From: Octopus bimaculoides
Taxonomy: Eukaryota
Assembly: GCF_001194135.2 (NCBI RefSeq)
Contig: NC_068991.1
Location: forward strand, 9,344,298 to 9,408,297
Length of the DNA stretch: 64,000 nucleotides
Reading direction: 5' to 3'
Under the pieces are notes generated by a model. It ran no database searches, was not told the DNA's origin, and saw nothing but the letters and a program-made list of their open reading frames with translations. Each line of letters opens with the position of its first letter. The first letter of the stretch is position 1. The position numbers and the translations under genes were made by a program. Below are positions 41 to 47,577 of this stretch, piece by piece.

Positions 41-187
41 ATGTTCGACAGTGTAACAATCCTATTTAGTGATGTTGTCGGCTTTACAAGTATTTGCAGT
101 ATGATTACCCCCATGGAAGTCGTTGGATTGCTGAACTCCATGTATACAATATTCGACAACATCAGCGAGAAACACCAAGTATATAAG
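41..187 (+). CDS. Gyc88E: Guanylate cyclase exon: [49 protein letters not shown]
   Basis: Acceptor taatttcag| at 40, donor |gtaata at 188; carries the first metal-binding Asp ([10 protein letters not shown]). Confidence 0.95.
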
Positions 188-7680: not shown

Positions 7681-7837
7681 GTAGAAACTATCGGTGATGC
7701 TTATATGTTAGTATCTGGCGCCCCTGTACGAATAGACAATCATCCTGTTGAAATATGTAACATGGCGCTAGATATGGTCTCAGAAATTGACGTAGTAGAT
7801 TCGACAGAAATCTGCGAGAAGTTAAAAATACGAATAG
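7681..7837 (+). CDS. Gyc88E: Guanylate cyclase exon: VETIGDAYMLVSGAPVRIDNHPVEICNMALDMVSEIDVVDSTEICEKLKIRI(G)
   Basis: Acceptor gtcatttcag| at 7680, donor |gtaagt at 7838; KVETIGDAYM motif (guanine-specifying Glu, second metal-binding Asp). Confidence 0.96.
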
Positions 7838-10151: not shown

Positions 10152-10261
10152 GTATTCATACAGGACCCTGTGTAGCAGGGGTTGTCGGTGTGAAGATGCC
10201 ACGGTATTGCCTCTTTGGAGACACAGTGAATACAGCCGCGCGGATGGAAACAAACGGAGAG
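10152..10261 (+). CDS. Gyc88E: Guanylate cyclase exon: (G)[36 protein letters not shown]
   Basis: Acceptor tttcttttcag| at 10151, donor |gttgta at 10262 (weak but GT); [12 protein letters not shown] guanylate cyclase signature. Confidence 0.96.
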
Positions 10262-14887: not shown

Positions 14888-14977
14888 GCAATGAAAATAC
14901 ATATTAGTGAGAGTACAATGAAGGCTGTGCCGCCAAACATGTTTGAAATGACAGAAAGAGGAGAAATTGACGTGAAA
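14888..14977 (+). CDS. Gyc88E: Guanylate cyclase exon: AMKIHISESTMKAVPPNMFEMTERGEIDVK
   Basis: Acceptor gtcttgcag| at 14887, donor |gtaagt at 14978; KIHIS and ERGEI.VK motifs; phase 0 at both ends. Confidence 0.95.
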
Positions 14978-15488
14978 GTAAGTATAGTCGCCAGGGTGAA
15001 CTGGTATTTTGTTACAGTAATGCATTTCAGTGTACAGTTCAGAGCGGATCGGAAACCGGTCCGCACAACTACTTTAGCAATATTACTGAGCTCATTATCT
15101 CCATTCAAATGAATTTAAGTGAAAATGAAAACCATATTTGTAATTTGAGAAACAGTAGAACCATTCCTTGCTCAGGTGAAGCATCGGAAATGAACGAAAC
15201 CATAAATTCTCTGCTCACTGCTGCCATCTTTGACGTCACCTCACTAATGATTCAAAATGGACGCTTAGCCAACGCATTTCGTCATGAAAAATGCACCTTC
15301 GATCGACGCAGATGAAGTTTTTAACGAACGCCAGCACACTTTTACTATATTCTCTCTCCTTCCATATCATATAACTGTAAGTTATTTAGAGTTTTTTTTT
15401 TTGTTTTTGTTTTTTTATTTTATGGAAAATTCATCCCATGAATCATGCTATATCTGGTTCAATCTCTGGGTTGAATTATATATACTAC

Positions 15489-15537
<49 letters not shown>

Positions 15538-16210
15538 CTTTTCTTTCTTTACTGAAACGATTGTTACATTTACTTGTAAGTTGATTCATCATCGTGTTTG
15601 GTTTTAGTCACTGCAAAAAAATTATTGCTTATCGTAAAATTATTTTCATAGATTGGCTTATGCCCACGAATGTTAGGAGAAGGTATGTTGTTACTTTAAC
15701 CAACACTAGTATTTGACAGGTACTAGTAATGGTATATATATTATTCACCCTGGAGGAATCAAGGACAAAGTCGACTTTGAAGAAGCAGAATTTTAGCAAG
15801 AGAACTGACGAGAGGCCTTAGAAAAATGCGAGAGAATGTTATATCAACTTGCATAAATAAAAAAAACTGCTAAAGACAACAAAATATCCGTCCAAGAGAA
15901 TATGAGATGTTAATACTGAGACCTAAAATTATCATCACATTGCATTCTGGAGGAAGCCTCGAAACCGCCCATCTATGAAGTTTCTAAAATCTCATATCAA
16001 AAGCTGGAGCAGTTTAATTCTTAAGACCAAAACAATCTTTAAGTTGCATACCAAGGAACTTAAAAAGGTTAAAGATTCATTATTTTATTATATTTGTCTC
16101 AGCACGGATATGCCTGCACACGTTCTAACTCACTTGCAGTTTATCCTTATTAATAAAATGGTTCGTCGGCTCTAATCTAAACCTTAAGATCCGAGATTTG
16201 TCAGCCAACT

Positions 16211-16400
16211 GTTGTTGTTGGCATTCCGTTGCTTACGACGTCGAGGGTTCCAGTTTATCCGATCAACGGAACAGCCTGCTCGTGAAATTAACGTGCAAGT
16301 GGCTGAGCACTCCACAGACACTCACAATGCCCGGTTTGGGAATTGAAACCGCGATCCTATGATCGCGAGTCCGCTGCCCTAACCACTGAGCCATTGCGCC
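16211..16400 (-). mobile_element. SINE family C (internally deleted)
   Basis: tRNA head joined to the family 3' end, with a CAA tail. Confidence 0.8.
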
Positions 16401-16876
16401 TCCTCTTCGTTGTTATATATCACTTAATACACGCACACAAACACATACACATATACACTCATAAGTATACGTGTATACTGTGAATATACATATGTAATAT
16501 TATATTACTGTGAATACAACAGTTAATATATCACTTATTATAAACCTCGTATTTCTGCTTTACCACAGCATGACAAACACCCGTTCCTTACAATTAAATC
16601 TACTTGCAATCACGGGTGTCCGCAAGCATCGACTGTGAGATAGCAACGTATCACAATAAGATGATATCAATTCATGATATCAACCGGTCTCGCATGAAAA
16701 CAGCAATAGAAGTATAGAATAAAGAACTAATAATAAATGACAAAAGAATCTAAATTATATAATTAAATATATTAGCTTAAGGCAATTTCAGATGAGAAGA
16801 TGACAATGCGAAGTAATGAGTAGCGTTTTATTAACGTCATTTCCACGGAACTAGAATATGCATATTAGAGAAAGAC

Positions 16877-16910
<34 letters not shown>

Positions 16911-17228
16911 TACACATATATATATTATATACACACCTACACCCAAAAATATGTGCATGTATGCATGTGAGTATAGGGGTGGGGTGTATAAAGGCTTTTC
17001 AAAATGAATACCTTCGTTCTGACTCTGAGAATGTGGAGTGAATAGAGCAATGCTCATTACTTGGTATTGTTCTGTCCTCTCCACTGAAACAGCTGTAAGG
17101 TAATATATTTAATTATGTGATTCATGTTCTTTTGTCATTTTCAATTATTTATATATGTGTGTGTGTATGTGTGCGCGCGTGTGTTATATTATATTATATT
17201 TAGATTATGTATATGAAATGTGTGAATG

Positions 17229-17277
<49 letters not shown>

Positions 17278-17925
17278 TCGTTATTATGCTGAAAGACAAA
17301 ATTGTTTCCATTTAAAAACAAATTAAATTGCCATAACAACAACAATAATGATAATAATACTAGAATAAGAATAATAACATTAATAATAATAATAGTACAA
17401 TTTATTATAAAAACATTATTATTAAAACAATATTATCACAATAACAATGATATTTGTGCCAATAAAAGAAACCATTATTACAATTATAATAATACAAGGG
17501 GAAAAAAACAAAATTATGCTATAGAATTTATCAATGATCATCGTATAAGCAACACATGAAGATACCGAATAATACTTAAATCCTTTAATGAAATTTACTT
17601 TGTATATCGTTTCATCTCGTCTATACATTAATCGGTAGTAGGATTACCATCCGACTAAAGAAAATTCATTCAGCGAAAAGTCTGTTCGCTCATACGAAAA
17701 CGATGGAACAAACAGATAGTATCTTTTATCTTTTTTGTGTGTTAGTCAGGGGACTGCGGCCATACTGGTGCACCGCCTTCAAACGTTTAGTCGAAAGAAT
17801 CGACTTTTGTAGTTGTGTTTTAAATCTGGTACTCATTCTATCGATTTCTTTGCCCGAACCGCTAAGTTACGGGGACGTAAAGAAACCAACGCCGTTTGTC
17901 ATGACGCGCGCACACACACACATAC

Positions 17926-17982
<57 letters not shown>

Positions 17983-19537
17983 GGCGCATAGCTTAGTGGT
18001 TAGGGCATTGCTGTCATGATCGCTAGATCGTGATTTCTATTCCTAGACCCTTCATCTCACCTTGCTCTGCGATCACTTCGACACCTGACACATGCTACAC
18101 CATGCACCTGTTCAAACAATGTTGATTTGATGAAGAGAGCCAGCTAATGTGTGGCATGAACATTTGATCATTATAAACAAATCATCTGTGCAGGTCATTC
18201 GGTAGAAGCTGGACGCTCATATGTCATATTCGACGAGAGAGTCCGTCANNNNNNNNNNNNNNNNNNNNNNNNNNNNNNNNNNNNNNNNNNNNNNNNNNNN
18301 NNNNNNNNNNNNNNNNNNNNNNNNNNNNNNNNNNNNNNNNNNNNNNNNNNNNNNNNNNNNNNNNNNNNNNNNNNNNNNNNNNNNNNNNNNNNNNNNNNNN
18401 NNNNNNNNNNNNNNNNNNNNNNNNNNNNNNNNNNNNNNNNNNNNNNNNNNNNNNNNNNNNNNNNNNNNNNNNNNNNNNNNNNNNNNNNNNNNNNNNNNNN
18501 NNNNNNNNNNNNNNNNNNNNNNNNNNNNNNNNNNNNNNNNNNNNNNNNNNNNNNNNNNNNNNNNNNNNNNNNNNNNNNNNNNNNNNNNNNNNNNNNNNNN
18601 NNNNNNNNNNNNNNNNNNNNNNNNNNNNNNNNNNNNNNNNNNNNNNNNNNNNNNNNNNNNNNNNNNNNNNNNNNNNNNNNNNNNNNNNNNNNNNNNNNNN
18701 NNNNNNNNNNNNNNNNNNNNNNNNNNNNNNNNNNNNNNNNNNNNNNNNNNNNNNNNNNNNNNNNNNNNNNNNNNNNNNNNNNNNNNNNNNNNNNNNNNNN
18801 NNNNNNNNNNNNNNNNNNNNNNNNNNNNNNNNNNNNNNNNNNNNNNNNNNNNNNNNNNNNNNNNNNNNNNNNNNNNNNNNNNNNNNNNNNNNNNNNNNNN
18901 NNNNNNNNNNNNNNNNNNNNNNNNNNNNNNNNNNNNNNNNNNNNNNNNNNNNNNNNNNNNNNNNNNNNNNNNNNNNNAACACTTTTTGAAAGCTGAAAAC
19001 CAAACAACATTTCCTATCATATTTATCTTCCACAAATTCATTATTTCTTTATTTCACGTTCTCTTACTCTCTTTCTTTTTCTTAGCTATTTACTTTCATT
19101 CTTTTCATTCTTTCATTACCTTTCCCTCTTATATAAGAGGGAAAATATTGAAATTTCCATCTATCACTTTCTTACCTTTTCTTTTTTACTCTCAGTTGCT
19201 CTTCTCTCTTTTTTCTTTTCATCCCGCTTCTTCCTTGCTCTCTTCGATCTCTCTTTTTCTCTCTCTCTCCCTTTCTTTTTCCTTCATCTCTCTTTCCCTT
19301 TCTATCTGTTTTATGACGTGCCTTCCAAACAAACGCAAACATTATTACGTCATTTCAGAAGGGTGAAGCTACAACTTCTCCCAAGATGGCATTGTTTACT
19401 AAGAAATATATCACAGCGAGTCAAGTAAATATTTGATAGTCTCGGCAGACAAAGCAGCAAACTTGGTACCACGGAGAACGTCGAGGAAGATTCGCTAAAA
19501 AAGTCATCCCATTCTCGTGTGACTTATTTTTATATAT

Positions 19538-19611
<74 letters not shown>

Positions 19612-20043
19612 ATGGAAGGATGAGCGGGTGGATGGATGGATGGATAGATAGACAGACATACATATAATTAAACAGAAAATATCTTAAATATCATTGTTTT
19701 CTTTATTATTATTTTTTCTGTTCATTTCAAGCATATGTGGCTCTTGTTCCTTCCTTATGGCCCGAGATGTATTGATGACGTTTCATGAACTGCATTTTTT
19801 TGAAAATAGGAGCTTAATGCAGAAGAAAATTGATCCCTAATTCCAGTGAGCGTGTGTTTGTGTGCAACCGGTGTTTGTTTGTTTACGTCCCCATAACTTA
19901 GCAGTTCTGGCCGACGTAATAAGTAGTTTAAAAAAACTATGGAATGTGGTATATCTGTTCGACTAAAAGCTTCAAGGTGATGCCACAGCATGGCTGCAGT
20001 CCAATGACTGATGCAAGTAAAAGATAAAAGACAAAAGATGTGT

Positions 20044-20080
<37 letters not shown>

Positions 20081-20772
20081 GCACATACATGCGTTCTTAC
20101 GTACGTACGTGTATCTATGCATATATATCTATAGGGACATATAATATTTAATTTTGTGTATATATCTGTATATGCACGCGCGTGTTTGTGTCGCTGCATC
20201 GATGTAATATTTTTTTAACCGTTTTGTTTCTGATGAAGAAAATTTATTGGGTTTTTTTCGTTTTTTTCATTTTCAGGTTATATTCTATAGCTAGCATCTT
20301 CTCTATATCAGAGACCAAGAAGAATTTCTAGTCACGCACAAAATAAAAGATATTTAGAAATCTTGACCCATTAAATATTACTCTACATTCATTTAGCCAT
20401 TGATACGCTACAACTGAACAAAAATCTGCATGTCAATTGGATAGTAAATCTTTCAAGAGATAATCACGATATATTTAAATAAATCCCTGTTGATAGTGAA
20501 AGGAAATGCAAATCCAGATCAAATTTAGATATTTAGGACTTATACGTTCTACAGTTTGCAAAATGATAATCGAAACGGGTTTGAAAAGAAAATCCACATA
20601 TTACTTACGAACGTGCGATTGCATAAATTGCATAAATTTAGTAATTCAGTAACATGCTTAATATCTGTGTCTTAAGTTTTGCACACAACTTATGTATGTG
20701 TGTGTGTATGTATGAATACATATAATATATACATACACATGTAATAACATTATATATATGCAAGTATATGAT

Positions 20773-20820
<48 letters not shown>

Positions 20821-21130
20821 ATGTATATATATTTATAAAATATATTTACTTTTGGGAATTTCTAAATACATATAGATATATGCACACACATAAATATATA
20901 TATATGAATATAGGCACGCACAATACATACGCATGCGCATACATATTTTGTATACTTGTGTCTGTTTGGCTGTGTTCAATAATGCCAAAGCTCTGTACTT
21001 CTGTCTATCGTGTACTTCCTTAGATCGATACGCTTGATCGATAATTTACATTCAATAAACTTCTGAATTCTAAACCATGCTAATTGTTTTATTAAGTCTA
21101 AACTCACCCTGTAATTTTCTCTGCTTGTAG

Positions 21131-21181
21131 GAAAAACCCCGGAAGACTTACTGGCTTTTAGGCTCCCTAAATTCTACGTAG
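21131..21181 (+). CDS. Candidate alternative terminal exon (or decayed exon duplicate): EKPRKTYWLLGSLNST*
   Basis: Follows a strong acceptor (ctgtaattttctctgcttgtag|); phase 0 matches the upstream exon; encodes TYWLLG, the canonical cyclase C-terminal strand; TAG TAA tandem stops; ATTAAA at 21221. Confidence 0.55.
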   Translation, partial: EKPRKTYWLLGSLNST

Positions 21182-21705
21182 TAAAAGGTTTTTACCTAGA
21201 AAGGTGCTATTCTGGATTTAATTAAATAAGATATTTTCGATTTTTTTTTAATCTTATAATCTAATACTTGCCTCTTGATGGATTGCTTTTGTTCTTTTTT
21301 AACATTTGTCCTGCTCATACTAACGTATTTATGTGCTTATGTTCGTGCATCGCTGTCTGAAGCGTGTTGTTGCCGTCGTGATCATGGTTGATGTTGTTGC
21401 CTGTGTTGCTAATGATATAAGGAATGGCAGTGTCGATGGTGGTAGCAGTGGGGTGCTGCTCCTGCTGCTATTTCCTGGTGAGTAAACCCGGTGTCTGGGC
21501 ACAGATACACCGAATCCGGAATCTATCTTCAGACTGATGTTTTGTCCGTCCGTGTACCGTTCTTTTTGAAGTGGCATGATGTCCTACATTGTTGTCCCTT
21601 GGAACGTCTAGATTTTCCAACGTCAAAAGCTACTCGAAAATCTTGTTGAGGGAATGTTAGCAGCTAGATTAAACTTATTTCTAACACAGGCGCAAAGGCC
21701 TGTGA

Positions 21706-22275
21706 TAATGGTTCTCAACCAGGGTCCATACGACCCCTGAGGTCCACATAAGATTTTGGGAGTGTCCATGCAAGAAAAATAGAAAATTGGAGATTCTCGG
21801 TATTTTAAGGGTTCATGAAAAAGATTCTGCTTAGATGTATTTATTGCAAGAAACAGTTAGGGGATATTAGGTCAAAATCCCCCGGCAGTCAATAGCCCCC
21901 AGTACATTGTTCTTTCTTAAATAAAAATATTTTAGGAAGGTGAAATTTTATTAAAAAAATTTCTTAATATTTATTAGTTGATATTTTTGTGAAAAATTTG
22001 TCCGGGTTGATTTTGTGATCGGGGGGCTTTGGCTTCGGGGGAATTTGTCCTTGGAGGGATTTTATCCTCGGCGGGATTTTGTTCTGATACCTTCTCAGAG
22101 AGCGCTATTGCAAACCTGCACAAGTGAGTGTGTAAAAGCAAGACAAGAATTTTGAAAGAAGCATCAATAAAACTACTTATTAAAAATCAAATGGCTATTT
22201 GGGGTCTACCAGAATAAAACAGTAATGAAAGGGGTCCATATGTAAAAAAAAAAAAAAAACTGTTGAGCACCATCG
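21706..22275. mobile_element. Degenerate hAT-like MITE with a nested MITE at 21861-22091
   Basis: Ends aatggttctcaac / gttgagcaccat. The nested element has gg(a)tatcagg.caaaatccc termini, the same family as 40478-40738. Confidence 0.55.
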
Positions 22276-22803
22276 GCCAAAAATCTTCCTCTATTAACTT
22301 ACATCGTTAGCATTTTTAAAGATTGTAATAAACGTTGGGTTGTATACTTCTCTGTTTACTATGTGTTTGAGGTTTGATTTTCTTACCCCCCACACTTACA
22401 CAAAATTCTGTGTGAAGTTCGTTTCATCTCTCCTCTTTGCATGATTACTATACTGGCTAACCATAATAATGTTCAAAATAGGTGGTTGTTTTGGGTTTGT
22501 TCGTTTAGTTTTGTGTTTTTTGTTGGTTTGTTTGTTTGATTTTCCTGAGGGGTTTTTTTTTTGTTTTTTGTTTTTTGCCTTGATGCGATATACTAACAAG
22601 ATCTCTTTCCCCTCTGCTCTTTACGGACACTTACCTTACTACTCTGTTTTGTTTCGATTCCTAATTGAAATCATTTTTTTTTAAACCTGTGATTCGACCG
22701 CATGCTCTCCTTTAGAAATTTTGCAGGCTAAGTGTGATGACTATATAAACATAATCTTTTTACTAAAATTTCGTGACATAGTCTTTAAGCCCGTCTCTGT
22801 TAA

Positions 22804-22871
<68 letters not shown>

Positions 22872-22993
22872 CTCTCTCATTCTCTCGTGCTCTTCTCCTC
22901 TCTTATTCGCTCATGTTTTCAATCAATTTTTTTACGATTTACTTTGTGTTATATTTAGTATGTAGACTGTTAAATTATTTTAATAATGTAGCA

Positions 22994-23237
22994 ATATTTA
23001 TACGACAATGGAATCTAGCACCACCACCACCCCACTCAGCTCAAAACAATATCTAATTTATAGATCAGTGACTAGTTGTCACTTTGAAAACTATATATTT
23101 CGAACGGGAATTTGGCAGCGCTACCTCTAGCCGAACAATTATTCTGTGTCGATGAAGGGAGATAACCCGGAAATCGCGATACACAGATATTGTTTTGAGC
23201 TGAGTGGGGGTGCTAGATTCCCTTGTTCGAAAATATA
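22994..23237. repeat. Inverted repeat (foldback) with a spacer of about 130 bp
   Basis: 23010-23054 and 23185-23221 are reverse complements apart from an extra accacc run. Confidence 0.8.
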
Positions 23238-23939
23238 AGGACACAGATCGTGTCGTATAGCCATCTGGAGACGATGTCTCCTGGGGCTAAATTACATCAA
23301 TATTCGTCCTAAACCAGGACTGCCATGTTATGTTAGCAAAAATCTTTACTCCAAAGTACTGTTGCTAAATATCTCTCGTTGTGGGATTTAAAAATAGTAA
23401 TTTTCTAATTATTATTATTATCGTTATTGTCGTTGTTGTTTTTTCTTGTTTTTTTGGGGGTTTTTTTGTTTGTTTTTTTATCATGAGCAGATATGTCTAA
23501 TGAGTCTTTCGAAGAAATTGGAATATTACCCACCGTTTTAATTTATGTAAAATGTTTTGAAATTATGTTACCAACGACATGTTTTGGAATGTTTGTATGT
23601 CCACTCCATTTACTTTGAAGTAAAAAATAATATGTTTGTCTTTATACATTTTATATGTTTTATGTTTTGTAAATAATGTTTACTAGAAATCCAAAGTGGC
23701 ATCTTATGGAGGAGTTCACAACAGTGCTGGTGGCACTAATGTAAACTGGTGCACTTAACTCACCGTACAAAAAGAAAATCTTTAATGAAGCGCACAGAAA
23801 ATTCAGACATATATGCACTGTGGAGGACACAAGAAAGAACAGTATAGCCAAGCCAGAAATCTAGACTCATATCCATACACAATAAAGAACATACAAGAAC
23901 AGTATAGAAAAATATAATTCAAACGATAACATTAGTAAT

Positions 23940-24487
23940 GATCCTTTCTACTAAAGGCACAAGTCCTGAAATTTTGGGGAAGGGGACTAGTCGATTACAT
24001 CGACCCCATTGTTTCACTGGTACGAAAGGAAGAAAGGCAAAGTTGACCTCGGCGGAATTTGATCCCAGAACCTAATCTTTTCTACTCTAGGCACAAGGCC
24101 CGAAATTTTGGAGGAGAGGGTCAGTCGATCGACCCCAGTACGCAACTGGTACTTAATTCATTGACCTCGAAAGGATGAAAGGTAAAGTCGGCCTCTTCAG
24201 AATTTGAACTCAGAACGTAACGTTAAGCATTTCGCCCGGCATGCTAACGATTCTTATTTCTTTATTACCCACAAGGCGCTAAACATAGAGGAGACAAACA
24301 AGGACAGACAAAGGGATTAAGTCGATTACATCGACACCAGTGCGTAACTGGTACTTTATTTATCGACCCCCGAAAGGATGAAAGGCAAAGTCGACCTCGG
24401 CAGAATTTGAACTCAGAACGTAACGGCAGACGAAACACCGCTAAGCATTTCGACCGGCGAGCTAACGATTCTGCCAGCTCGCTGCCT
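23940..24487 (-). mobile_element. Head-to-tail multimer of three SINE A units
   Basis: One full unit followed by two 5'-truncated units with different tails. Confidence 0.85.
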
Positions 24488-25689
24488 TAATAACGTTAGT
24501 AATGATAGAAGCTGCTTCGCAAGCCAAAGAAGACTCTTCATCTTAAGTTGACTCTCGGAAAAGAAAATGACATGGCAGAGCTTTGTCGCAAGGTGCAGTG
24601 CTTCTCTGCATTTCGAATGCGTTGAAGAACTGCCAAAAATATTAAGAGCTTTTATATGTTCACTAAAAAGTAGTTGAAAGAAGCTCTAGCCGATGTTTGG
24701 TGCTTTGTCGTTTCTATCGATCGGAGTAGGATCTAATGAAAACGTGTATCTGATCTTTGAGGCTGAAGATGAGATAAGGGAAATGGGAGAAATGGTGCGT
24801 CATAAACTCACTCATAAACTAGTGCCGAAATGCATGGGTCGATGCAACATAAGTATTAAGGCCAATGACTTCGGTTTAGACGATAAATCTTGGTGCCGAA
24901 TGAACCGGTGGTGAGTGCTGAGGTAACACCAAATGATAGCAGATTTGGTTGGCTCTGCAATAAACATAGAAGCCCTGATGATCTTTGAAGACCACAAAGC
25001 TATTCATGAGCTGAGTTCAGTCGTGGGTGTTGAGAGAAAGAGGAAAAGATTACAAACGGGATACAGAAAACCCAACAAACCTATGACGAAAAGCGTTTGG
25101 GTCGTGACCATCCCGTCTCTGATATATGGTATACTATCGCCTTGGGTCGAGCAATATTTTATGAGTTGAACTTGGTATGCAGAAACTGTGTAAAAGCCCA
25201 TTGTATACACATACGTGTCTGTGTGCGAGTGAAAGAGAGGGGGGAGATTATAAATTCCTTATGCAATTTTAAATTTGCATAAATTAATATTTTTGATATG
25301 GTAGAATTATTCTGTGAAAAGGTTCAGTGAGAGAATTTATTTCATTTTTAGATTGAAATATTTTTGATTGTTAATTTTCAACATATCCACCGCCATTATG
25401 CACACAAAGCTTGAAGCGATTCTGAAGTTGCAGAAATACGTTTTGAGGCTGAATTTTTAAAATCACATTCGTTATCCTATCCCGCAAGCCATCTCAACAA
25501 GTTTGGTCAAATAAATAGCTATATTTAAATGTTTCCGTTAAAAGTTGAAGTAAATATAATTTTTTTTTTCTATTTTCAAAAGCAATAGTTACCATATTTG
25601 ATAGCATAAAAGACACATGCATATTAAACACACCCTTAATTTCAACAACGCATATTCTGGGAAAAAAATTATCAGTGCATTAAATTTTA

Positions 25690-26758
25690 CGACTTCGGAA
25701 TCTCTTACAACTCTTCTGGGCGGTTTCCTTGTTTAAATTGGTGAATGCTGCCGTAATCCTTGCCTTTAGTTCATCTTTAGTGTTACAAGAAGTTTTATTG
25801 GTCTCTCGCTCAACTGCGCCCCACACATAGTAATCAAGGGGTTTCAGTCTGGGGAGTTAGGTGGCCAAATGTTAGGGGTGATGTGGTTGCAGAAATTGTC
25901 TAACCGCCATGACTGGGTTCTCCTGTTTGCGTGACATAGGCTCTTCCAGCAACCACCCTGCTGACCCAGGCACTTGATGTAGGCCTCCGTGCTGAGTCTG
26001 AGGTCGTGTGGGAAGATGAATGGAGGCATAACGTCGCCATCACTAGTGATCACTCCAAACACCATGATGCTTGACTGGACGTTTGATTTTTATCACTCTC
26101 GGTACATGTTTTGGGGGACACGGCAAGCCAACGGTTGTTCTGTGTGTTCACCATTTTGTGAAAAACCAAAGCATGTTCAGTTGGAGGGGATGCTTGAGTT
26201 TATTCAACAGCTTCGTAGTGCGGCCTTCCCTCTTGTTCTTGATGGCTTGGGATAAAAATTGGTCCTTTATCATCTTGTATGTGGAATATCAAATGTCTTC
26301 ATGCACTACCTGCCTGATAAGCAACTCATCCACTCCTATGTCCTTGGTGATGGACCTGATTGACTTGGAGGGATTGTTGTCAATCATGGCCTGGGTCTCA
26401 CCAACAAATTCATGAGTTATTTTCTTATCAGAACGACCAGAGTGAGTTTTCCGAGCTGCCGTACCTTCGTAATCATCATTAGACTCATCCAACTCTTTCC
26501 GAATCCTCTGCACTGTCCTCAAATTGACACCGAAACACTCTGAAATGTTTGTATTGGGGCTTCTGGTATGAATACCAAGCAGTACAGCATGCCGTTTCCA
26601 ATTTTCTAGCAGAGTGAATTGCGCCATGGTACTGTTTTTCTCACAGACGGTGCCCAATTGACCCTACTATACTGTGCAGTCGACAGAATCAAAAACAAAC
26701 AACGCGCATACGCAAAATTAAAGATATAAAATGGCGACAATTTACTCATCGCACCCTG
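25690..26758 (-). mobile_element. Decayed Tc1/mariner (maT/DD37D-like) transposon, one end with TIR
   Basis: Minus-strand fragments: HTH-like N-terminus (ORF 26289-26657), MVFGVITSDGDVMPPFIFP and WPPNSPD*NPLDYYVWGAVERET. Terminus TA|CAGGGTGCG at 26758-26760. Stops, frameshifts and loss of the first catalytic Asp segment. Confidence 0.88.
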
Positions 26759-26764
26759 TATGTA

Positions 26765-26844
<80 letters not shown>

Positions 26845-27254
26845 CATGTATGTATATGTGTGGGTGTGTATTTGTGTGTGTATTATGGGTGTGTTTGTGC
26901 TTGGGTAGGTGATCTGAATAACAGTATGAATAGAAATAATCTCCCCCAAAATATCACAATTTCCCAAACAATAGTTTCGTTAAACTCATGAGAAAGATTT
27001 CTTTGTCTTTCTTTTTCTTTTTCTTTTTCTTTTTCTGCGAGATGGGTGTGATACCTTCGTTTAATCTCTCAAGACCTTTCTTGAGAGAAAGCAAGATATC
27101 AGCGTTTTTGCTTCATTCTTTAGTATTACTATTTCATACTTAATCATCTTTTTGTTTTGTTTTTGTCTTTTTTTGTTTTTTTGCTTTGTTTTTTTTTTCC
27201 TGAGAAGGGTAAGATTATGCCTTTGTATAGCCTCTCCCGGTCCTCATTTTTCTT

Positions 27255-27565
27255 AATGTTACAACCATATGGAAGTGAGATGTTGAGGTCTTGTGGGTCG
27301 TTCATCCTGCAAAACTCGAACGATTCTTGGAGTTACTGGCGCAGCATAGAGGAGAGTCATAAATTTCACCATCGAAGCTTCAGAGAAGGCTACGAAGTGG
27401 TTTTGGATAAGGAGGCCAGAGCAGTGGTTTGTTGCTGCTGGGATGCAAGCTGGGGCTTGACCAACACTTGGCTGAGTCAACAGGGTGAGTAGGTCTGATG
27501 TTGAAAAACTCGAAACTACCATGGACTCCAGAAATGTCACTAACGATGCATCCATTACATCCATT
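27255..27565 (+). mobile_element. HERO-like RLE non-LTR retrotransposon 3' end
   Basis: RG.VGRSSCKT.TILGVTGA..RR.I.FTIEASEKATKWFWIRR followed by a 3' UTR (ctgatgttgaaa..cgaaac..ctccag..cact.acgatg..tcc) that resembles recalled HERO 3' ends. Confidence 0.6.
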
Positions 27566-28281
27566 TCATCTTAATACCAAAACTATCTGCTTTTAGAGCT
27601 TTGCCTGATTATCACGAACCGGAAAATTGGTAAGGTACAAAATAAAAGGAAACGTATATACTATACATGTTTTGTTTTTTTTTGTTCCTTAACTTCAAGT
27701 CTAGACTTCTAATCCCACCAAATATTATAAGGAAATGGTTATCTCCCTTTTACTCGTCGACGCCACATCTTTAGTCTTCCTCTTTCATATTTGATAATCT
27801 TCTTCAACATCTACTTCCATTTCATACCAGCTGTTGTTCAGTCAACACTAACCAATCTTTTTTTTTTTTTTTGTCACTAGGCACTCCGTCGCTTACGACG
27901 TCGAGGGTTCCAGTTGATCCGATCAACGGAACAGCCGGCTCGTGAAATTAACGTGCATCCCAGGAGCAGCAAACCACTGCTCTGGCCTCCTTATTCAAAA
28001 GTACCGACTTTAAGCACGCATGTGCAGGAGGCAGTGTAACAATAATAACGATATGTTATGGCGAAAGTACGGATAATTTTTTGACTTACCCTTGTATTTT
28101 CTAAAGTTATTATATTTCCCAAAAAGATTAGTAAAAAGCGTGAGCATGGCTGAGTGGGTTAGAAGTTTGCTTTGCAGCAACCTGGTTTGGTGTTCCATCC
28201 TCTGCGTGACGCCTTCGACATATGTCATCTACTATAGCCTCGGACCGACCAAAGCTTTATGAATGAATTTGGAAGCCTGTC

Positions 28282-28314
<33 letters not shown>

Positions 28315-28318
<4 letters not shown>

Positions 28319-28560
28319 GTTGGCAACTAAGTTCCCGCCGTTTTTTTAAATTTCGGAATTTATTGCGTTTTTAAATTTTGGAATCTATTTCTTTTTCGTT
28401 TTTTCCGAATTCCTCACGCAAAGCATTGGCCAACTTGGAGCTGCAATAGAGAAACATTTGCTCTAAGTACAGCTCAGTTCTCAAGAACCACCCGAAGCGT
28501 TTGGTTGCAGCGAAGCAAACTTATAGCTACACGGCTTTACCTACATTTTTTTTTAATTAC
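28315..28560 (+). mobile_element. Mariner-type TIR and left-end remnant
   Basis: TA|TTGGGTTGGCAACTAAGT resembles mellifera-subfamily mariner TIRs (recalled); no partner TIR found; right boundary uncertain. Confidence 0.45.
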
Positions 28561-29488
28561 TTTTTATCTTGTGGTAATATATCAGGGAGTGAAATTTATC
28601 TAAAAAACTTGTTGCGTGCCTAGAAAAAGAATCTCAATTTAGTTAGCTGGAATATTTCTCGAGTGGTTCTTAACAGGAACTGTGAGTGGTATTGGCGACA
28701 GAGTGTCGTCGCTACTATTTCCTTCACTCTTCAACAGTTTCTGATCTTCTCTCTGTTGCTGGATTCTCACAGCTACCCACACCAAAATTCCAACTCTTTC
28801 GCTATTATTATATTCATCTCTCCTTCTTCATTGAGTATTGCTTTAACTCCCCTTGCACCCAGGGTTTTCATTCTTTGTTCATTATTTCATTCATTCACGT
28901 TCTTATTTTTTTCTTTCATTCATGCATATATTCTTTAATTCTTTCATACATTCTTCCTTTCATTCAAAGCTAAGAGAGAGGATGAATGTTCTTATAGGGG
29001 GACAACCGCATCTAAGGGNNNNNNNNNNNNNNNNNNNNNNNNNNNNNNNNNNNNNNNNNNNNNNNNNNNNNNNNNNNNNNNNNNNNNNNNNNNNNNNNNN
29101 NNNNNNNNNNNNNNNNNNNNNNNNNNNNNNNNNNNNNNNNNNNNNNNNNNNNNNNNNNNNNNNNNNNNNNNNNNNNNNNNNNNNNNNNNNNNNNNNNNNN
29201 NNNNNNNNNNNNNNNNNNNNNNNNNNNNNNNNNNNNNNNNNNNNNNNNNNNNNNNNNNNNNNNNNNNNNNNNNNNNNNNNNNNNNNNNNNNNNNNNNNNN
29301 NNNNNNNNNNNNNNNNNNNNNNNNNNNNNNNNNNNNNNNNNNNNNNNNNNNNNNNNNNNNNNNNNNNNNNNNNNNNNNNNNNNNNNNNNNNNNNNNNNNN
29401 NNNNNNNNNNNNNNNNNNNNNNNNNNNNNNNNNNNNAAAAGCCTCAGAGTCGTTTAAAATTATTACGATAGATTTTTCTTATTCTTCT

Positions 29489-29573
<85 letters not shown>

Positions 29574-30719
29574 TTGGCCTGCTTTTCATCTCACAACAGA
29601 CAGTGAATTCGTGCGTCCGTGACTTTATATCCAATACTAGTGTCGAGTCGTGAAGAACAATTAAATTCTACGAACTTCAAAGGGAATCAGTAGACTACAA
29701 AGAAACTAATGACTGCCTTTATCTACCTTGGCAAGTAGTCAGTGAGGAGGTTCACAAAGTAATATTAGTAGGCCAGGACAAACAGGGGGGATCTGGCGTT
29801 TCTTTTCGTCGTGTCAAACTAGCTTATACCACTCAGTGAACTTTTTCTACGAGCTTCAATTGAACCGGCTGTCAAGCAACAAGAATTAGCTTTTCTAGAA
29901 ACATTCTGCTTACTTGCGGTTCGGTTTACTTGATGACAAGCAAAATGGTGGAAGAGAGCGTGAATCTGTCCTAAGAACGAAATAGTATTTGCGTGTGAAT
30001 GTGTGCTTGTGTGAGTGTGTGTGTGCGTGTCTGTGTGTTTCTGCAGAAAGAGGGGAGGGGGTGAAATGGAGACAGAAGATAGAGGCAACAAGGGAGATAA
30101 CTGAAGTGTGGTGATAAAATCCGTGCGGCCTACATTGCAGGTTCGCTGACATGTTGAGTCATTTCACTCTACCTCCACCAACATGTGAGACTCTTTAAGG
30201 TCACCAGACCTGCCAGAAACAGCAGCCAAATTCCCTGTAATTTATGCCCAACCGTTTAAAAAAAGATAACTATAACTATATTGCGTAGTCTTGGATAAAT
30301 GATAGGAAAAAAAACAAACAAACAAACGTGATGATTATGCCTGAAACGCTTTTGATGATAAGCCTATTCAGTCAGATTTGGTACATAAGGTTAAACAACT
30401 AATTACTTGTATCTGCCATTTCCAATCGTAGTTAAAGCCAGAAGAGTGGACTAGGCTCTCATAGACTTGCTCTTTATGCGTTTCACCAACACGTAATAGA
30501 CTTACTCTCGCTCTCTCCTTCTTTCTCTCTCTCTTTCTTTCTTTCTCTTTCTCTCTTATCTAAAAAGTGCGAAACTAAATACTATAATGGCGTTTGTTTC
30601 GGTGTATAATCTTATCAGCCAAGCCATCTTCTCTGTCCGAAACATGAATAATAGAAACAAAACGTTAATTGTCGCACGCTGATTTTTTTCTTTCTTTCTT
30701 TATCGTGAACAAAATGAAA

Positions 30720-30720
<1 letters not shown>

Positions 30721-30805
<85 letters not shown>
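30721..30805. repeat. (TG)n microsatellite
   Basis: Read directly. Confidence 0.95.
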
Positions 30806-30812
<7 letters not shown>

Positions 30813-31430
30813 TGTCTGTCTGTGTAGATGTACTTAATGTACGTTTCTAGACATTGTGGATGAGATGGTAGGTATCCATAATGTGTCGAGCAACTTAAAA
30901 TATATTCATGACAAATAATTGTTTCAAGTCTATTTGTTGTTTTTTTTTTATTTATTCGTATTTCTATTTTAACAAATTGAGTGAGAATCAGTTTTCCAAA
31001 TGATTGTAAAGATTCTTTTAAGTTGCCCGGGTTGTAAGGCATTCGCTGCTGGATGTTGTTATTGCTGCTGTTGTTGTGACTATGATGATGATGATGATGA
31101 TGACGATGATGATGTTGCTGCTGCTGCTGCTACTACTTAGCCGCAGACCAGCACTGACTGAACAGATTTGTGGTCAAAGTTACTTCAGCTGCAACAATCT
31201 TGTCTTATATGTAGTCGTATCGCATCTCAGGCTACGTTGTGCAATATATATAGCCTTTCCTGTCTAGACGATTTGGTCTGATTGAAGGGAGATTTTGGTA
31301 TTATTTCTAGAAGTCGATTATTCTTTGAGAAAGTGGGAGTGAGAGAGAAAGAAGCTCAGATGTCAGCTTAATACTAATAATGGTTTTGTTTGAGATAAAA
31401 ACCATACTCTTTCTCAATTGTATGAAGGGT

Positions 31431-31498
31431 GACCAGTAAATTCCACCTTGGTAAATTCCACCACGGAAAATTTTACCAGGTAAATTCCACCATGGTAA

Positions 31499-31500
<2 letters not shown>
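31431..31500. repeat. Four GGTAAATTCCACC-like units, probable MITE subterminal array
   Basis: Read directly; followed by (ATT)n and an N gap. Confidence 0.6.
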
Positions 31501-31560
<60 letters not shown>

Positions 31561-31801
31561 NNNNNNNNNNNNNNNNNNNNNNNNNNNNNNNNNNNNNNNN
31601 NNNNNNNNNNNNNNNNNNNNNNNNNNNNNNNNNNNNNNNNNNNNNNNNNNNNNNNNNNNNNNNNNNNNNNNNNNNNNNNNNNNNNNNNNNNNNNNNNNNN
31701 NNNNNNNNNNNNNNNNNNNNNNNNNNNNNNNNNNNNNNNNNNNNNNNNNNNNNNNNNNNNNNNNNNNNNNNNNNNNNNNNNNNNNNNNNNNNNNNNNNNN
31801 N

Positions 31802-32133
31802 GATCGCGGTTTCGATTCCCAGACCGGGCGTTGTGAGTGTTTATTGAGCGAAAACACCTAAAGCTCCACGAGGCTCCGGCAGGGGATGGTGGCGAACCCT
31901 GCTGTACTCTTTCACCACAACTTTTTCTCACTCTTACTTCCTGTTTCTGTTGTGCCTGTAATTCAAAGGGTCAGCCTTGTCACACTGTGTCACGCTGAAT
32001 ATCCCCGAGAACTAGGTTAAGGGTACACGTGTCTGTGGAGTGCTCAGCGACTTGCACGTTAATTTCACGAGCAGGCTGTTCCGTTGATCGGATCAACTGG
32101 AACCCTCGACGTCGTAAGCGACGGAGTGCCAAA
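31802..32133 (+). mobile_element. SINE family C
   Basis: ggtttcgattccc B box; ends gaaccctcgacgtcgtaagcgacggagtgcc. Confidence 0.85.
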
Positions 32134-32567
32134 AACAAATACTTGTGCTTGTCTATTTTCAAATACATGTCACTAACCGTTCTGAGTTATTTCTCTTACT
32201 TCATTTTTTTGCTTAAATTATGTCTATTTACTCGTTTTTAGAAGTAATAATATCAGAATATGTTGTTATGTGTGTGTGATCTGATCACTTACATTGTATA
32301 TCGACACAGTGAGGTGATAGACCGCAGGTGTGTGAGGAAACACGTGTGAAATTAAGCGTGAAATGGAATAAATGGGTTATTGGAAATAGTGTTTCTATAT
32401 CGTGAATATGGCGAATACATTAGGACGTCAATAACCTTGCGCGCGTGTGTGTGTGTGCGCGCGCGTGCGTACATGTGTCTGTGTAAATAGAAGAGGTAGG
32501 AAGACAAAATTATAACACAATGTGTCTGTGTATCTGTGTATATATATATACATATACACATATACAT

Positions 32568-32600
32568 ACTAGCGGAGATACCCGGCGTTGCTCGCGAGTA
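32568..32600 (+). mobile_element. Helitron/HINE-like terminal motif
   Basis: ACTAGCGGAGATACCCGGCGTTGCTCG resembles recalled 5' ends of non-autonomous Helitron-type elements; flanked by a degenerate duplication of about 230 bp. Confidence 0.4.
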
Positions 32601-33345
32601 AAATGTCATAGTTTGTATATATACATATACANNNNNNNNNNNNNNNNNNTATATATATGTAACTGTGTATTTACAATGCATTGTTGAGGTAATGTAATAA
32701 GAACGAAATATGTCCAGAATTGTCACCATAGATACCAAAAACCAGACTCATTCCCTAACCCTGCAAATCTCTATTTATTCTCTGGTCCATTGAAATATAG
32801 AGTTCTCTCCCTTGCCCCATTTGTTAGTAATTTTCATTGCCGTTAATGGATTTTCTTCTCATTACAGTTATAATGCACTCTTTCGAAAAATCACTATCTT
32901 CATTTATTTATTTTATTTTAACAAGTAACACTCGCCGAACGTGTGCTGTCAAGTGTGTCTGCATCACCTGATCAATTATATTGTATCTCGATGCAGTGAG
33001 ATGATAAACCACAGGTGTATGATAAATACAACGATGAAGTTAACTGTAAAAGTGAATAAATGAATGCATTGAAATAGTGCTTGCGTAATAAATCGTGAAT
33101 CCGACTAAAACATTAGAATGTTAATACCAATATATGTCCGTGTGTATGTGGATTCAGATATATAAATAGATAGAAGAGGAGATAGATGTATGAAATGATG
33201 GTGAGCTAGCTAGCTAGCATTTCATCCATGAATGAGACTATAACTTATCTATCTTTCTTTCTTTCTAACTGTCTGTCTCTCTATGGAGAGACAGACAGTT
33301 AGAAAGATAGAAAGACAGACAGACAGGCAGATAGATAGACAGATA

Positions 33346-33578
33346 GGCGGCGAGCTGGCAGAAATGTTAGCACGCCGGGCGAAATGCTTAGCGGTATTTC
33401 GTCTGCCGTTACGTTCTGAGTTCAAATTCCGCCGAAGTCGACTTTGTCTTTCATCCTTTCGGGGTCGATAAATTAAGTACCAGTTACACACTGGGGTCGA
33501 TGTAATCGACTTAATCCCTTTGTCTGTCCTTACTTGTCCCCTCTATGTTTAGCCCTTTGTGGGCAATAAAGAAATAAG
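33346..33578 (+). mobile_element. SINE family A, full length, tail type 2
   Basis: Highly similar to 9741-9973. Confidence 0.9.
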
Positions 33579-33895
33579 ATTTTGTATGTCTGGAATTCAA
33601 CTTCATGCATGCTATTGAAATTGTCATTCTGCAAGATTTTGATTGTAAGCTGGAGTAAGAGTTTTCGGAAGTAGTACGACACTGTTTACTTTGTTGTCTT
33701 CCGTGACTTTTATTTTCAAATTCAATTTGATAAGTGCCAACGCACGAAACTCTCGGCCCTTAATTCACTCTGTTCTTGCTTGCATCACCGAATCTGTATT
33801 TTCAAATTCATATATTTGAATTCTATGATATAAAATGTATTGATAATCAAATTTTATTTATTTATTTAACCAAACTTTTTTATCATTTTCCACAG

Positions 33896-34408
33896 GGTAA
33901 AGGTCGCATGGAAAGCTACTGGCTGAATGCAAAAACGAAGAAAATCAGGCTACCGAATCGAAGAATCAAAATAAAAAAAGCAACCAGTGTGAAATATAAG
34001 GCAGAACACATTATTCTTGAACAAAGCGAAGAACTGGACGACCGTCTAACACCGGATGTTACTAATAAGCTACTAAACGACTTGGAAAACCCAGACACTG
34101 TGCATTCTGAAAGATCTGAAGTGTATTCTCCTGTTAGTTATGAAACAACTGATAGCTCCACTGGGAGCTCTCCGGGGCGGCGTCCTAAAAAGAAATCCGC
34201 CACTCCAACGTATTGCCCCGTTCACTGCAGCCGCTGCTTAGAGAACAACTCGAACACAGACATTTGCAAACAGAGCGGGTCGACGGAATTGTTAACTAAG
34301 GCGGATGATAACATGTTTAAATCAGATTTTGCTGCAGCAAATGGAATGCCGAAAAAATTTGCGTCAAGAACAGGCAAAAGAAACAGCAGTTTATGTTCTC
34401 TGATTTAA
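33896..34408 (+). CDS. Gyc88E: Terminal coding exon: GKGRMESYWL plus a long low-complexity tail ending KRNSSLCSLI*
   Basis: Acceptor tcattttccacag| at 33895; completes VK|GKG.M.[ST]YWL; 170 codons open to TAA at 34406-34408. Confidence 0.93.
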   Translation, partial: GKGRMESYWLNAKTKKIRLPNRRIKIKKATSVKYKAEHIILEQSEELDDRLTPDVTNKLLNDLENPDTVHSERSEVYSPVSYETTDSSTGSSPGRRPKKKSATPTYCPVHCSRCLENNSNTDICKQSGSTELLTKADDNMFKSDFAAANGMPKKFASRTGKRNSSLCSLI

Positions 34409-47364: not shown

Positions 47365-47577
47365 ATGGTTACAAGTTTTGGCACAAAGTCAGCAAGTTCG
47401 GAGAGGGGTTAAGTCGATTATATCAATCCCAGTGCTCAACTGGTACTTATTTTATCAACCTCCAAAGGATGAAAGGTAAAGTCGACCTCGGCGGAATTTG
47501 AACTCAGAACGTAAAGACGAGTAAAATGTCGCTAAGCATTGTGCCCGGCGTGTTGGCAAGTCTGCTAGCTCGTTGCC

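What the first reader, a model, noticed from the sequence alone, without database searches (positions are those of the whole stretch)
21105..21230. Hidden in-frame alternative last exon: a possible switch between a membrane-anchored and a soluble cyclase
Seen: inside the 18.9-kb intron, a strong acceptor (ctgtaattttctctgcttgtag|) is followed in the matching phase by EKPRKTYWLLGSLNST, then TAG TAA, then ATTAAA and T-rich sequence. Established: class III cyclase domains end in VKGKG-x-x-x-TYWL-x-G (e.g. NPR1 KGKGKVRTYWLLGE), so this peptide duplicates exactly the strand supplied by the distal exon (GKGRMESYWLNA). Inference: mutually exclusive terminal exons would give a 170-aa basic, CaaX-bearing tail or a 16-aa tail with no anchor, changing localisation and tail regulation. 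The GKG turn is altered and one residue shorter, so the product could have changed activity, or this could be a decaying exon duplicate. It is too short to appear in the ORF track.
Basis: partly seen in the sequence, partly recalled or inferred. Interest (0 to 1): 0.85.

Follow-up and report, generated by a model that had tools for sequence, protein, structure and literature searches.

The report
Annotated short-tail isoform of octopus guanylate cyclase
The short exon is a real alternative last exon of an Octopus bimaculoides oxygen-sensor-type (Gyc-88E-like) soluble guanylate cyclase gene, but public annotation already lists it as isoform X2, so only its unstudied functional meaning is open.

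Summary
A splice acceptor ends at 21130. An in-phase 16-codon frame, EKPRKTYWLLGSLNST, follows, then TAG TAA, ATTAAA and a T-run. It lies inside the 18,918-nt last intron of a Gyc-88E-like soluble guanylate cyclase gene.

It is not chance. The peptide is the best match in the whole window to a profile of cyclase C-terminal strands, and 1 of 300 shuffled windows reach its score.

It is not hidden. RefSeq XP_014785282 (Octopus bimaculoides isoform X2, also UniProt A0A0L8G070) ends with exactly this peptide. O. sinensis isoform X4 (XP_036363133.1) ends with EKSRRTYWLLGSLNST.

The exon is also present in O. vulgaris DNA. There it sits in the most conserved 200 bp of the intron, at 98.5% identity against 89.4% for the intron as a whole. 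I found no counterpart in Argonauta hians.

The short isoform keeps the whole catalytic domain. It drops a 170-residue tail carrying a YSPV motif and a CaaX end, both conserved across the Gyc-88E family.

The proposed switch from a lipid-anchored to a free enzyme is reasonable but untested. I could not inspect transcript reads directly.

Verdict: a real alternative last exon, already annotated, of modest interest.

The parts
41..187 (+). First cyclase-domain exon in the window (MFDSVTILF...HQVYK)
   Evidence: The spliced translation equals the matching part of XP_014785281.2 and XP_014785282.2.
7681..7837 (+). Cyclase-domain exon (VETIGDAYML...KIRIG, ends in phase 1)
   Evidence: matches the RefSeq proteins.
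10152..10261 (+). Cyclase-domain exon (IHTGPCVAG...RMETNGE)
14888..14977 (+). Shared penultimate coding exon (AMKIHISESTMKAVPPNMFEMTERGEIDVK), phase 0 at both ends, donor gtaagt at 14978. Its last Lys is probably the phosphate-contacting Lys.
   Evidence: The Lys assignment is inference from PMC3591389 plus my own recollection of the beta-1 numbering.
14978..33895 (+). Last intron of the long isoform (18,918 nt), containing the alternative terminal exon
20960..21130 (+). Highly conserved intronic flank upstream of the alternative exon. It includes a candidate branch point CTCAC (21103-21107) and the pyrimidine tract and acceptor (21109-21130).
   Evidence: 98.8% identity to O. vulgaris with 2 mismatches in 171 nt, against 89.4% for the intron as a whole. 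The upstream 150 nt is 98.7% identical, against 81-92% for the constitutive exons.
21131..21181 (+). Alternative terminal coding exon: EKPRKTYWLLGSLNST plus the TAG stop. A second stop, TAA, follows at 21182-21184.
   Evidence: Identical to the C-terminus of XP_014785282.2 / A0A0L8G070. O. sinensis X4 and O. vulgaris DNA carry EKSRRTYWLLGSLNST. The profile score is 15.0 bits.
21185..21330 (+). Probable short 3' untranslated region and polyadenylation region: ATTAAA at 21221-21226 and a T-run at 21241-21249
   Evidence: The sequence is. Identity to O. vulgaris is 96.6%, with ATTAAA unchanged. The cleavage site was not observed.
33896..34408 (+). Distal terminal coding exon of the long isoform: GKGRMESYWLNA strand, polybasic stretch (33932-34000), YSPVS motif (34124-34138), CaaX CSLI (34394-34405) and stop at 34406-34408. 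AATAAA lies at 34802.
   Evidence: Identical to the end of XP_014785281.2. The motifs are conserved across the family.

Best explanation
The window holds the 3' half of the Octopus bimaculoides Gyc-88E-like atypical soluble guanylate cyclase gene. This family has haem-domain (HNOB), HNOBA and class III cyclase domains.

The segment 21131-21181 is a genuine alternative last exon. After the shared exon ending ...GEIDVK (14977), the transcript can take one of two routes. It can splice to the proximal acceptor at 21131 and be cleaved and polyadenylated shortly after ATTAAA at 21221. Or it can skip that site and splice to the distal acceptor at 33896.

Both exons supply the final beta-strand of the cyclase fold (xYWLxx), so both products should carry a complete catalytic domain. 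The proximal exon shortens the hairpin turn by one residue (GKG becomes EKP) and ends the protein seven residues after YWL.

The distal exon adds a 170-residue tail. That tail carries a polybasic stretch, a family-wide YSPV motif and a CaaX end (CSLI). The short isoform is therefore predicted to lack lipid anchoring and whatever else the tail mediates.

What is shown: the sequence anatomy, the identity to annotated isoforms in two species, the presence and strong flank conservation in a third genome, and the compatibility with the fold.

What is inferred: the choice of polyadenylation site, regulated usage, catalytic activity of the short form, prenylation of the long form, and any change in localisation.
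For: - Isoform models: XP_014785282.2 (= UniProt A0A0L8G070) and XP_014785282.1 of O. bimaculoides end ...ERGEIDVKEKPRKTYWLLGSLNST, identical to the window. XP_014785281.2 ends with the distal exon, also identical. O. sinensis XP_036363133.1 (647 residues) ends EKSRRTYWLLGSLNST, while its X1-X3 carry the long tail.
- O. vulgaris DNA has the exon at L002:39575-39622 in the orthologous intron.
- Conservation: the 200-nt window 21028-21227 ranks first of 482 windows in the intron, at 98.5% identity against a mean of 89.8%. The top seven windows all overlap the exon or its flanks.
- Flank pattern: the upstream 150 nt is 98.7% identical, against 81-92% for the four constitutive coding exons. By general knowledge, this is the pattern of regulated alternative exons.
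- Not chance: 15.0 bits, with 1 of 300 shuffles reaching that score.
- Fold compatibility: the Pfam match extends to profile position 182 of 183. The domain aligns end to end with solved NPR1 through KGKGKvRTYWLLGE with a single one-residue gap. The AlphaFold2 model has mean pLDDT 92, with a terminal hairpin at E157-167 and E170-180 and a tail block at pLDDT 96.
- Tail conservation: of 112 long-tail family members, 99 have Cys at position -4 and 103 have a Y[SFT]P[VI][STR] motif.
- Precedent: mammalian sGC beta-2 has a C-terminal extension with an isoprenylation consensus (PMC8200204).
Against: - No transcript reads or junctions could be inspected. Support for usage rests on annotation models whose evidence level I could not see.
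- No assembled transcript open reading frame covering this cyclase domain, in either isoform, was found among sequencing-run assemblies.
- The only two substitutions in the exon between O. bimaculoides and O. vulgaris are both nonsynonymous (P to S, K to R). The exon itself (96.1%) is no better conserved than its non-coding flanks. The constraint seen may therefore act on RNA processing or another element rather than on the peptide.
- No counterpart was found in the 4-kb orthologous intron of Argonauta hians, so the exon is not old or not universally kept.
- The AlphaFold2 result is biased by an alignment made of canonical tails.
Confidence: 0.8

Rival explanations
1. The exon is spliced at a low level but has no function of its own. 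On this reading it is a lineage-specific cryptic terminal exon or premature polyadenylation site that annotation pipelines pick up. The local conservation would reflect a different element, such as an intronic enhancer, a splicing or polyadenylation regulator of the host gene, or a slowly mutating patch.
For: - Both exon substitutions between the two species are nonsynonymous, with no synonymous change.
- The non-coding flanks are at least as conserved as the coding part.
- It is absent or undetectable in Argonauta.
- Short-tail forms are almost unknown elsewhere in the family.
- No assembled transcript fragments were found.
Against: - The frame, both stops, the TYWLLGSLNST codons, the acceptor and ATTAAA are all identical in O. 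vulgaris.
- The peptide reproduces the strand the fold needs, at exactly the ancestral exon boundary and phase. A random premature polyadenylation site is not expected to do that.
- It is modelled independently in two species' annotations.
Confidence: 0.17
2. It is a chance open frame behind a chance AG, with no relation to the cyclase.
For: The frame is only 16 codons long, and AT-rich introns contain many AG and pyrimidine runs.
Against: - It is the best profile hit in 64 kb across six frames, and only 1 of 300 shuffled windows reach its score.
- It is on the correct strand, in the correct intron and in the correct phase.
- It is conserved in O. vulgaris and O. sinensis.
- It is annotated as coding.
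Confidence: 0.01
3. It is a decaying tandem duplicate of the distal exon, or a fragment of another cyclase gene or a repeat inserted in the intron, no longer used.
For: The peptide resembles the start of the distal exon (K, R, YWL shared). TYWLLG is the typical receptor-cyclase form of the strand.
Against: - There is no nucleotide similarity between the exon with its flanks and the distal exon with its flanks: score 24, against 21.9 +/- 3.3 for shuffles.
- There is a single copy in the window and in each 42-67 kb orthologous locus.
- A decaying relic would not be the most conserved stretch of the intron.
- It is used in annotated isoforms.
Confidence: 0.02

Closest known systems
RefSeq and UniProt isoform models of this very gene: O. 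bimaculoides soluble guanylate cyclase 88E isoform X2 (XP_014785282.1/.2, A0A0L8G070) and O. sinensis isoform X4 (XP_036363133.1)
   Same: The C-terminal peptide is identical in O. bimaculoides and differs at two residues in O. sinensis. The exon junction after ...GEIDVK is the same, and the alternative to the long CSLI-ending isoforms is the same.
   Different: Nothing differs in sequence. The database entries carry no functional statement. The O. bimaculoides models are N-terminally truncated (276 and 430 residues) because the gene is split into two models there, whereas O. sinensis has one 302-kb gene.
Gyc-88E / MsGC-beta3 / GCY-31 atypical (oxygen-sensing) soluble guanylate cyclases
   Same: The best full-length relatives are named Gyc-88E or gcy-31-like. 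The O. sinensis orthologue has the HNOB, HNOBA and cyclase domains. The long isoform has the family's tail features, a YSPV motif and a CaaX-like end. According to PMC1435932 these enzymes bind NO weakly, act as oxygen sensors and can be active as homodimers.
   Different: The Octopus short isoform ends seven residues after YWL. Among about 130 family sequences inspected, almost none end that early: one Owenia model, one 1201-residue entry without a name and one truncated beetle model were the others. Oxygen sensing in Octopus is not tested.
Mammalian soluble guanylate cyclase beta-2 subunit (GUCY1B2)
   Same: It has a C-terminal extension beyond the cyclase domain with a consensus for isoprenylation and carboxymethylation (PMC8200204). 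Beta-2-like proteins appear among the more distant hits.
   Different: It is a different orthology group. No alternative last exon removing the tail is known to me.
Receptor guanylate cyclase NPR1 catalytic domain (solved, for example 9bcv)
   Same: The short-isoform domain aligns from residue 2 to 183, including vkekpr-ktywllg against MKGKGKvRTYWLLG.
   Different: NPR1 is a transmembrane receptor with a GKG turn. The Octopus exon has EKP and is one residue shorter.

Membership tests
Class III nucleotidyl cyclase catalytic domain (Pfam PF00211) | Full-length match to the domain profile above the curated cut-off | tested here: met
   222.0 bits with the alternative exon and 229.9-232.3 bits with the distal exon, against a cut-off of 21.9. 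Both reach profile position 182 of 183.
Class III nucleotidyl cyclase catalytic domain (Pfam PF00211) | Terminal beta-hairpin with the strand xYWLxx completing the fold in the short isoform | tested here: met
   The AlphaFold2 model has strands at 157-167 and 170-180, with pLDDT 96 for residues 171-180. The NPR1 alignment has a single one-residue gap. This is a prediction only, biased by the alignment.
Gyc-88E-like atypical soluble guanylate cyclase | HNOB + HNOBA + cyclase architecture and closest relatives in that group | tested here: met
   O. sinensis X1 and X4 carry PF07700, PF07701 and PF00211. The top named hits are 'soluble guanylate cyclase 88E' or 'gcy-31-like'. The window itself holds only the cyclase part.
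Gyc-88E-like atypical soluble guanylate cyclase | Long C-terminal tail with a YSPV-type motif and a CaaX-like end | tested here: met
   The long isoform has YSPVS (34124-34138) and CSLI (34394-34405). Of 112 relatives, 103 have the motif and 99 have Cys at position -4. The short isoform lacks both by construction.
Gyc-88E-like atypical soluble guanylate cyclase | Haem-based O2 (not NO) sensing and cGMP synthesis | not testable with these tools
   This needs biochemistry. The haem domain also lies outside the window.
Alternative last exon (skipped terminal exon type) | Own 3' splice site, in-frame stop and own polyadenylation signal inside an intron of the longer isoform | tested here: met
   Acceptor at 21109-21130, stops at 21179-21184, ATTAAA at 21221-21226 and a T-run at 21241-21249. 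The acceptor, stops and ATTAAA are identical in O. vulgaris; the T-run is there with a small length difference.
Alternative last exon (skipped terminal exon type) | Transcripts that join the upstream exon to it and end there | tested here: inconclusive
   The support is indirect only, from RefSeq and UniProt isoform models in two species. No reads or transcript contigs could be examined. No matching open reading frames were found in sequencing-run assemblies.
CaaX-prenylated proteins | C-terminal Cys-aliphatic-aliphatic-X tetrapeptide | tested here: met
   CSLI is present at the end of the distal exon. It is conserved in O. sinensis, O. vulgaris and Argonauta.
CaaX-prenylated proteins | Actual prenylation and membrane association | not testable with these tools
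   This needs metabolic labelling or localisation experiments.

The most novel reading that the evidence does not exclude
The exon is an Octopus-lineage innovation, absent from Argonauta. It is under regulatory constraint and lets neurons or other cells choose between two forms of an oxygen-sensing guanylate cyclase. One is tail-bearing and prenylated; the other is a fully active tail-less cytosolic form. The choice would move cGMP production between membrane and cytosol. This would be a rare case of a newly evolved terminal exon that rebuilds an essential structural strand of an ancient catalytic domain.
Probability: 0.3. Interest if true: 0.45.

Novelty: already known. Interest (0 to 1): 0.22.

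Why it matters
As a discovery it adds little. The isoform is already in RefSeq for two Octopus species and in UniProt.

Three points are of some value. First, the long tail it removes carries two motifs conserved from insects to lancelets: a YSPV-type motif and a CaaX end. Second, tail-less forms are almost absent elsewhere in the family. Third, the exon's flanks are the most conserved part of a 19-kb intron.

Together these make the Octopus gene a convenient natural experiment. It could show what the conserved tail of atypical, oxygen-sensing soluble guanylate cyclases does, which I found no paper addressing in the searches run here.

Tried and rejected
- Homologue search with the 186-residue short-isoform domain: it returned only proteins of 326 residues or fewer and no cephalopod. 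The tool seems to list only hits up to about 1.75 times the query length. I got round this with a chimeric query, a scallop N-terminus joined to the window's C-terminus.
- Representative-library search: it gave a 177-residue genomic open reading frame of the distal exon from a related octopus (P0122, 84% identical) but nothing about the alternative exon.
- The look-up of encoding contigs for O. sinensis X4: not on record, because only the longest product per gene is kept. For O. sinensis X1, the gene range of 302 kb is too long for DNA to be returned.
- Cuttlefish (Acanthosepion pharaonis) locus L004: it reaches only the first cyclase exon, so the orthologous last intron could not be examined.
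- Origin by tandem exon duplication: there is no nucleotide similarity beyond chance, so the origin is left open.
- Rfam scan of the whole window: no RNA family was found that could explain the conserved island.
- Pfam scan of six repeat-like open frames elsewhere in the window: nothing found.
- Literature: no paper links Octopus with guanylate cyclase 88E, and none was found on prenylation of Gyc-88E-type enzymes.

Full report
**1. The observation**

The sequence is as described.
- The shared exon 14888-14977 encodes AMKIHISESTMKAVPPNMFEMTERGEIDVK. It is in phase 0 at both ends and is followed by gtaagt.
- Inside the next intron (14978-33895, 18,918 nt) the tract ctgtaattttctctgcttgtag ends at 21130.
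- 21131-21178 then reads EKPRKTYWLLGSLNST in the same phase.
- TAG TAA follow at 21179-21184, ATTAAA at 21221-21226 and a run of T at 21241-21249.
- The distal exon 33896-34408 encodes 170 residues from GKGRMESYWLNA to CSLI.
- The other cyclase-domain exons in the window are 41-187, 7681-7837 and 10152-10261.

**2. Is it more than chance?**

I built a small profile from the C-terminal strand of 108 guanylate cyclases found.
- In all six frames of the window the candidate is the top hit at 15.0 bits. The next hit scores 8.4 and the canonical distal exon 7.6.
- Of 300 dinucleotide-preserving shuffles of the window, one reached 15.0.
- That figure ignores three further conditions the hit meets: it lies on the right strand, in the right intron, and directly behind an AG at the ancestral exon boundary and phase.

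With the general Pfam model PF00211, the scores are as follows. The test sequence was the 168-residue core with two N-terminal residues read from the intron.

| Sequence | Bits |
|---|---|
| Core alone | 213.6 |
| Core + candidate | 222.0 |
| Core + three shuffled candidates | 215.9-216.2 |
| Core + intron read-through | 215.1 |
| Core + distal exon start | 232.3 |

No second copy of 21105-21230 was seen in the readable part of the self-BLAST output, which was cut. The matches seen came from a microsatellite further upstream, roughly 20690-20950.

**3. What it is**

The gene belongs to the Gyc-88E / gcy-31 group of atypical soluble guanylate cyclases. A search with a chimeric full-length query followed by a cluster look-up identified the window as Octopus bimaculoides. 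It also showed that the exon is already annotated.
- XP_014785282.2, 'soluble guanylate cyclase 88E isoform X2' (276 residues), is identical to UniProt A0A0L8G070. Both it and the older XP_014785282.1 end ...ERGEIDVKEKPRKTYWLLGSLNST.
- XP_014785281.2 (isoform X1) ends with the distal exon, residue for residue as in the window.
- In O. sinensis, XP_036363133.1 (isoform X4, 647 residues, with the complete HNOB, HNOBA and cyclase architecture) ends ...ERGEIDVKEKSRRTYWLLGSLNST. Isoforms X1-X3 carry the long tail.

The exon is not hidden.

**4. Comparative evidence**

I fetched four orthologous loci: O. bimaculoides (L003, the same sequence as the window with an offset of 4317), O. vulgaris (L002), Argonauta hians (L001) and part of the cuttlefish Acanthosepion pharaonis (L004).

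*O. vulgaris.* The exon is at L002:39575-39622 (EKSRRTYWLLGSLNST), in a 34-kb orthologous intron.
- The two introns align over about 14 kb at 89.4% identity.
- Among 482 sliding 200-nt windows, the most conserved is 21028-21227 at 98.5%. The seven best windows all overlap the exon or its flanks.
- The 150 nt upstream of the exon are 98.7% identical, against 81-92% upstream of the four constitutive coding exons. The 150 nt downstream are 96.7% identical, with ATTAAA unchanged.
- High conservation of intron flanks is, by general knowledge, typical of regulated alternative exons.
- The exon itself has two differences (CCC to TCC, AAG to AGG). Both change the residue (P to S, K to R), and there is no synonymous change. 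The TYWLLGSLNST codons and both stops are identical. With so few changes, protein-level selection can be neither shown nor excluded.

*Argonauta.* The orthologous intron is only about 4 kb. Protein search, nucleotide search and the strand profile all found nothing there. The exon is therefore either an innovation of the Octopus lineage or was lost in Argonauta.

*Other species.* The cuttlefish locus stops after the first cyclase exon. The O. sinensis gene spans 302 kb and its DNA was not returned.

**5. How it most likely works**

This is the skipped-terminal-exon type of alternative last exon. The outcome depends on a competition. One route uses the proximal acceptor and then cleaves and polyadenylates after ATTAAA. 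The other splices to the distal acceptor 12.7 kb further on. Because the stop lies in the terminal exon, the short mRNA should not be a target of nonsense-mediated decay (inference).

All catalytic residues are encoded upstream of the choice point.
- The lysine expected to contact the gamma-phosphate is K593 of human beta-1, equivalent to K1065 of adenylyl cyclase (PMC3591389).
- By my own count of the beta-1 sequence, which I did not verify here, this is the Lys of ...DVK, the last residue of the shared exon.
- The alternative exon replaces the turn GKG by EKP, drops one residue, and restores the strand KTYWLLG.
- The short-isoform domain aligns end to end with solved NPR1, with a single one-residue gap.
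- An AlphaFold2 model has mean pLDDT 92 and places residues 170-180 as the last strand of a hairpin, at pLDDT 96. That prediction leans on an alignment of canonical tails.

What is lost is the 170-residue tail. Among 112 long-tail members of the family, from insects, molluscs, brachiopods and lancelets, 103 carry a Y[SFT]P[VI][STR] motif. This typically reads YSPVSFEDV, and Octopus has YSPVS at 34124-34138. In the same set, 99 have Cys at position -4 (Octopus CSLI).

Mammalian beta-2 also has an extension with an isoprenylation consensus (PMC8200204).

The proposed consequence is a tail-less, non-prenylated and probably cytosolic enzyme against a tail-bearing, lipid-anchored one. It is reasonable, but every step of it is inference.

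**6. Rivals**

- *Low-level processing noise.* On this reading the conservation is due to some other element. This is the only serious rival. It is favoured by the two nonsynonymous changes, the absence in Argonauta, the rarity of short-tail forms in the family and the lack of assembled transcript fragments. It is disfavoured by exact preservation of frame, stops, acceptor and poly(A) signal. It is also disfavoured by the fact that the peptide rebuilds the needed strand at the ancestral boundary.
- *Chance.* Excluded.
- *Decaying duplicate or inserted repeat.* Not supported. There is no flank similarity to the distal exon, each locus has a single copy, and the segment is the best-conserved part of the intron.

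**7. Novelty and verdict**

The feature is real and correctly read, but it is already annotated in RefSeq and UniProt. I found no paper on it. Its residual interest is as a natural tail-deletion variant of an atypical soluble guanylate cyclase. I score the interest as low to modest.

Noticed in passing
window 33896-34408 (YSPVS at 34124-34138; CSLI at 34394-34405): The long tail of Gyc-88E-type cyclases carries two deeply conserved features. A YSPV[ST]F-DV-like motif is present in 103 of 112 relatives, and a CaaX-like end in 99 of 112, often preceded by a basic or Ser-rich stretch. I found no literature on their function in the searches run.
   Followed up: partly
Upstream of the window (whole gene); proteins P0391, P0385 and P0389 against P0392: In O. 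bimaculoides, and likewise O. vulgaris, the gene is annotated as two separate models: an N-terminal haem-domain part of 371 residues and a C-terminal part of 430 or 276 residues. In O. sinensis it is one gene of 302 kb encoding 798 or 647 residues. The O. bimaculoides isoform models are therefore N-terminally truncated.
   Followed up: partly
Outside the window; proteins P0396-P0398 (sequencing-run assemblies) and P0387 (O. vulgaris): Several octopus transcript-like open reading frames and one gene model stop after ...FQFNWKN by reading into an intron. This suggests intron retention or a further truncated product containing only the haem-sensor domains.
   Followed up: no
Orthologue models P0001 (Patella), P0006 (Limulus), P0107 (Schistosoma): These gene models end by intron read-through directly after the ...[VL]K that precedes GKG. 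The phase-0 intron at this position is therefore ancient, and the last exon is often missed by annotation.
   Followed up: no
Protein P0298 (Owenia fusiformis, 665 residues): This annelid family member also has a short tail (...HITIKTYWLEGRETKHANELSHLPI) and lacks the GKGxMx turn. It may be an independent short-tail form or a mis-modelled splice.
   Followed up: no
window 3923-4087, 46543-46719, 47286-47498 (also near 24036): Several copies of a short dispersed repeat whose + strand frame reads ...STGT(F/Y)FI.P..M.GK(V/F)DLGGI. Other repeat-like open frames at 47.7-50.3 kb have no Pfam match.
   Followed up: partly
window, 15 runs of N (for example 4650-5324, 18249-18977, 29019-29436, 31561-31801): Assembly gaps and abundant CA/TA-type microsatellites interrupt the introns. 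About 1.4 kb of the 18.9-kb intron is unknown sequence.
   Followed up: no
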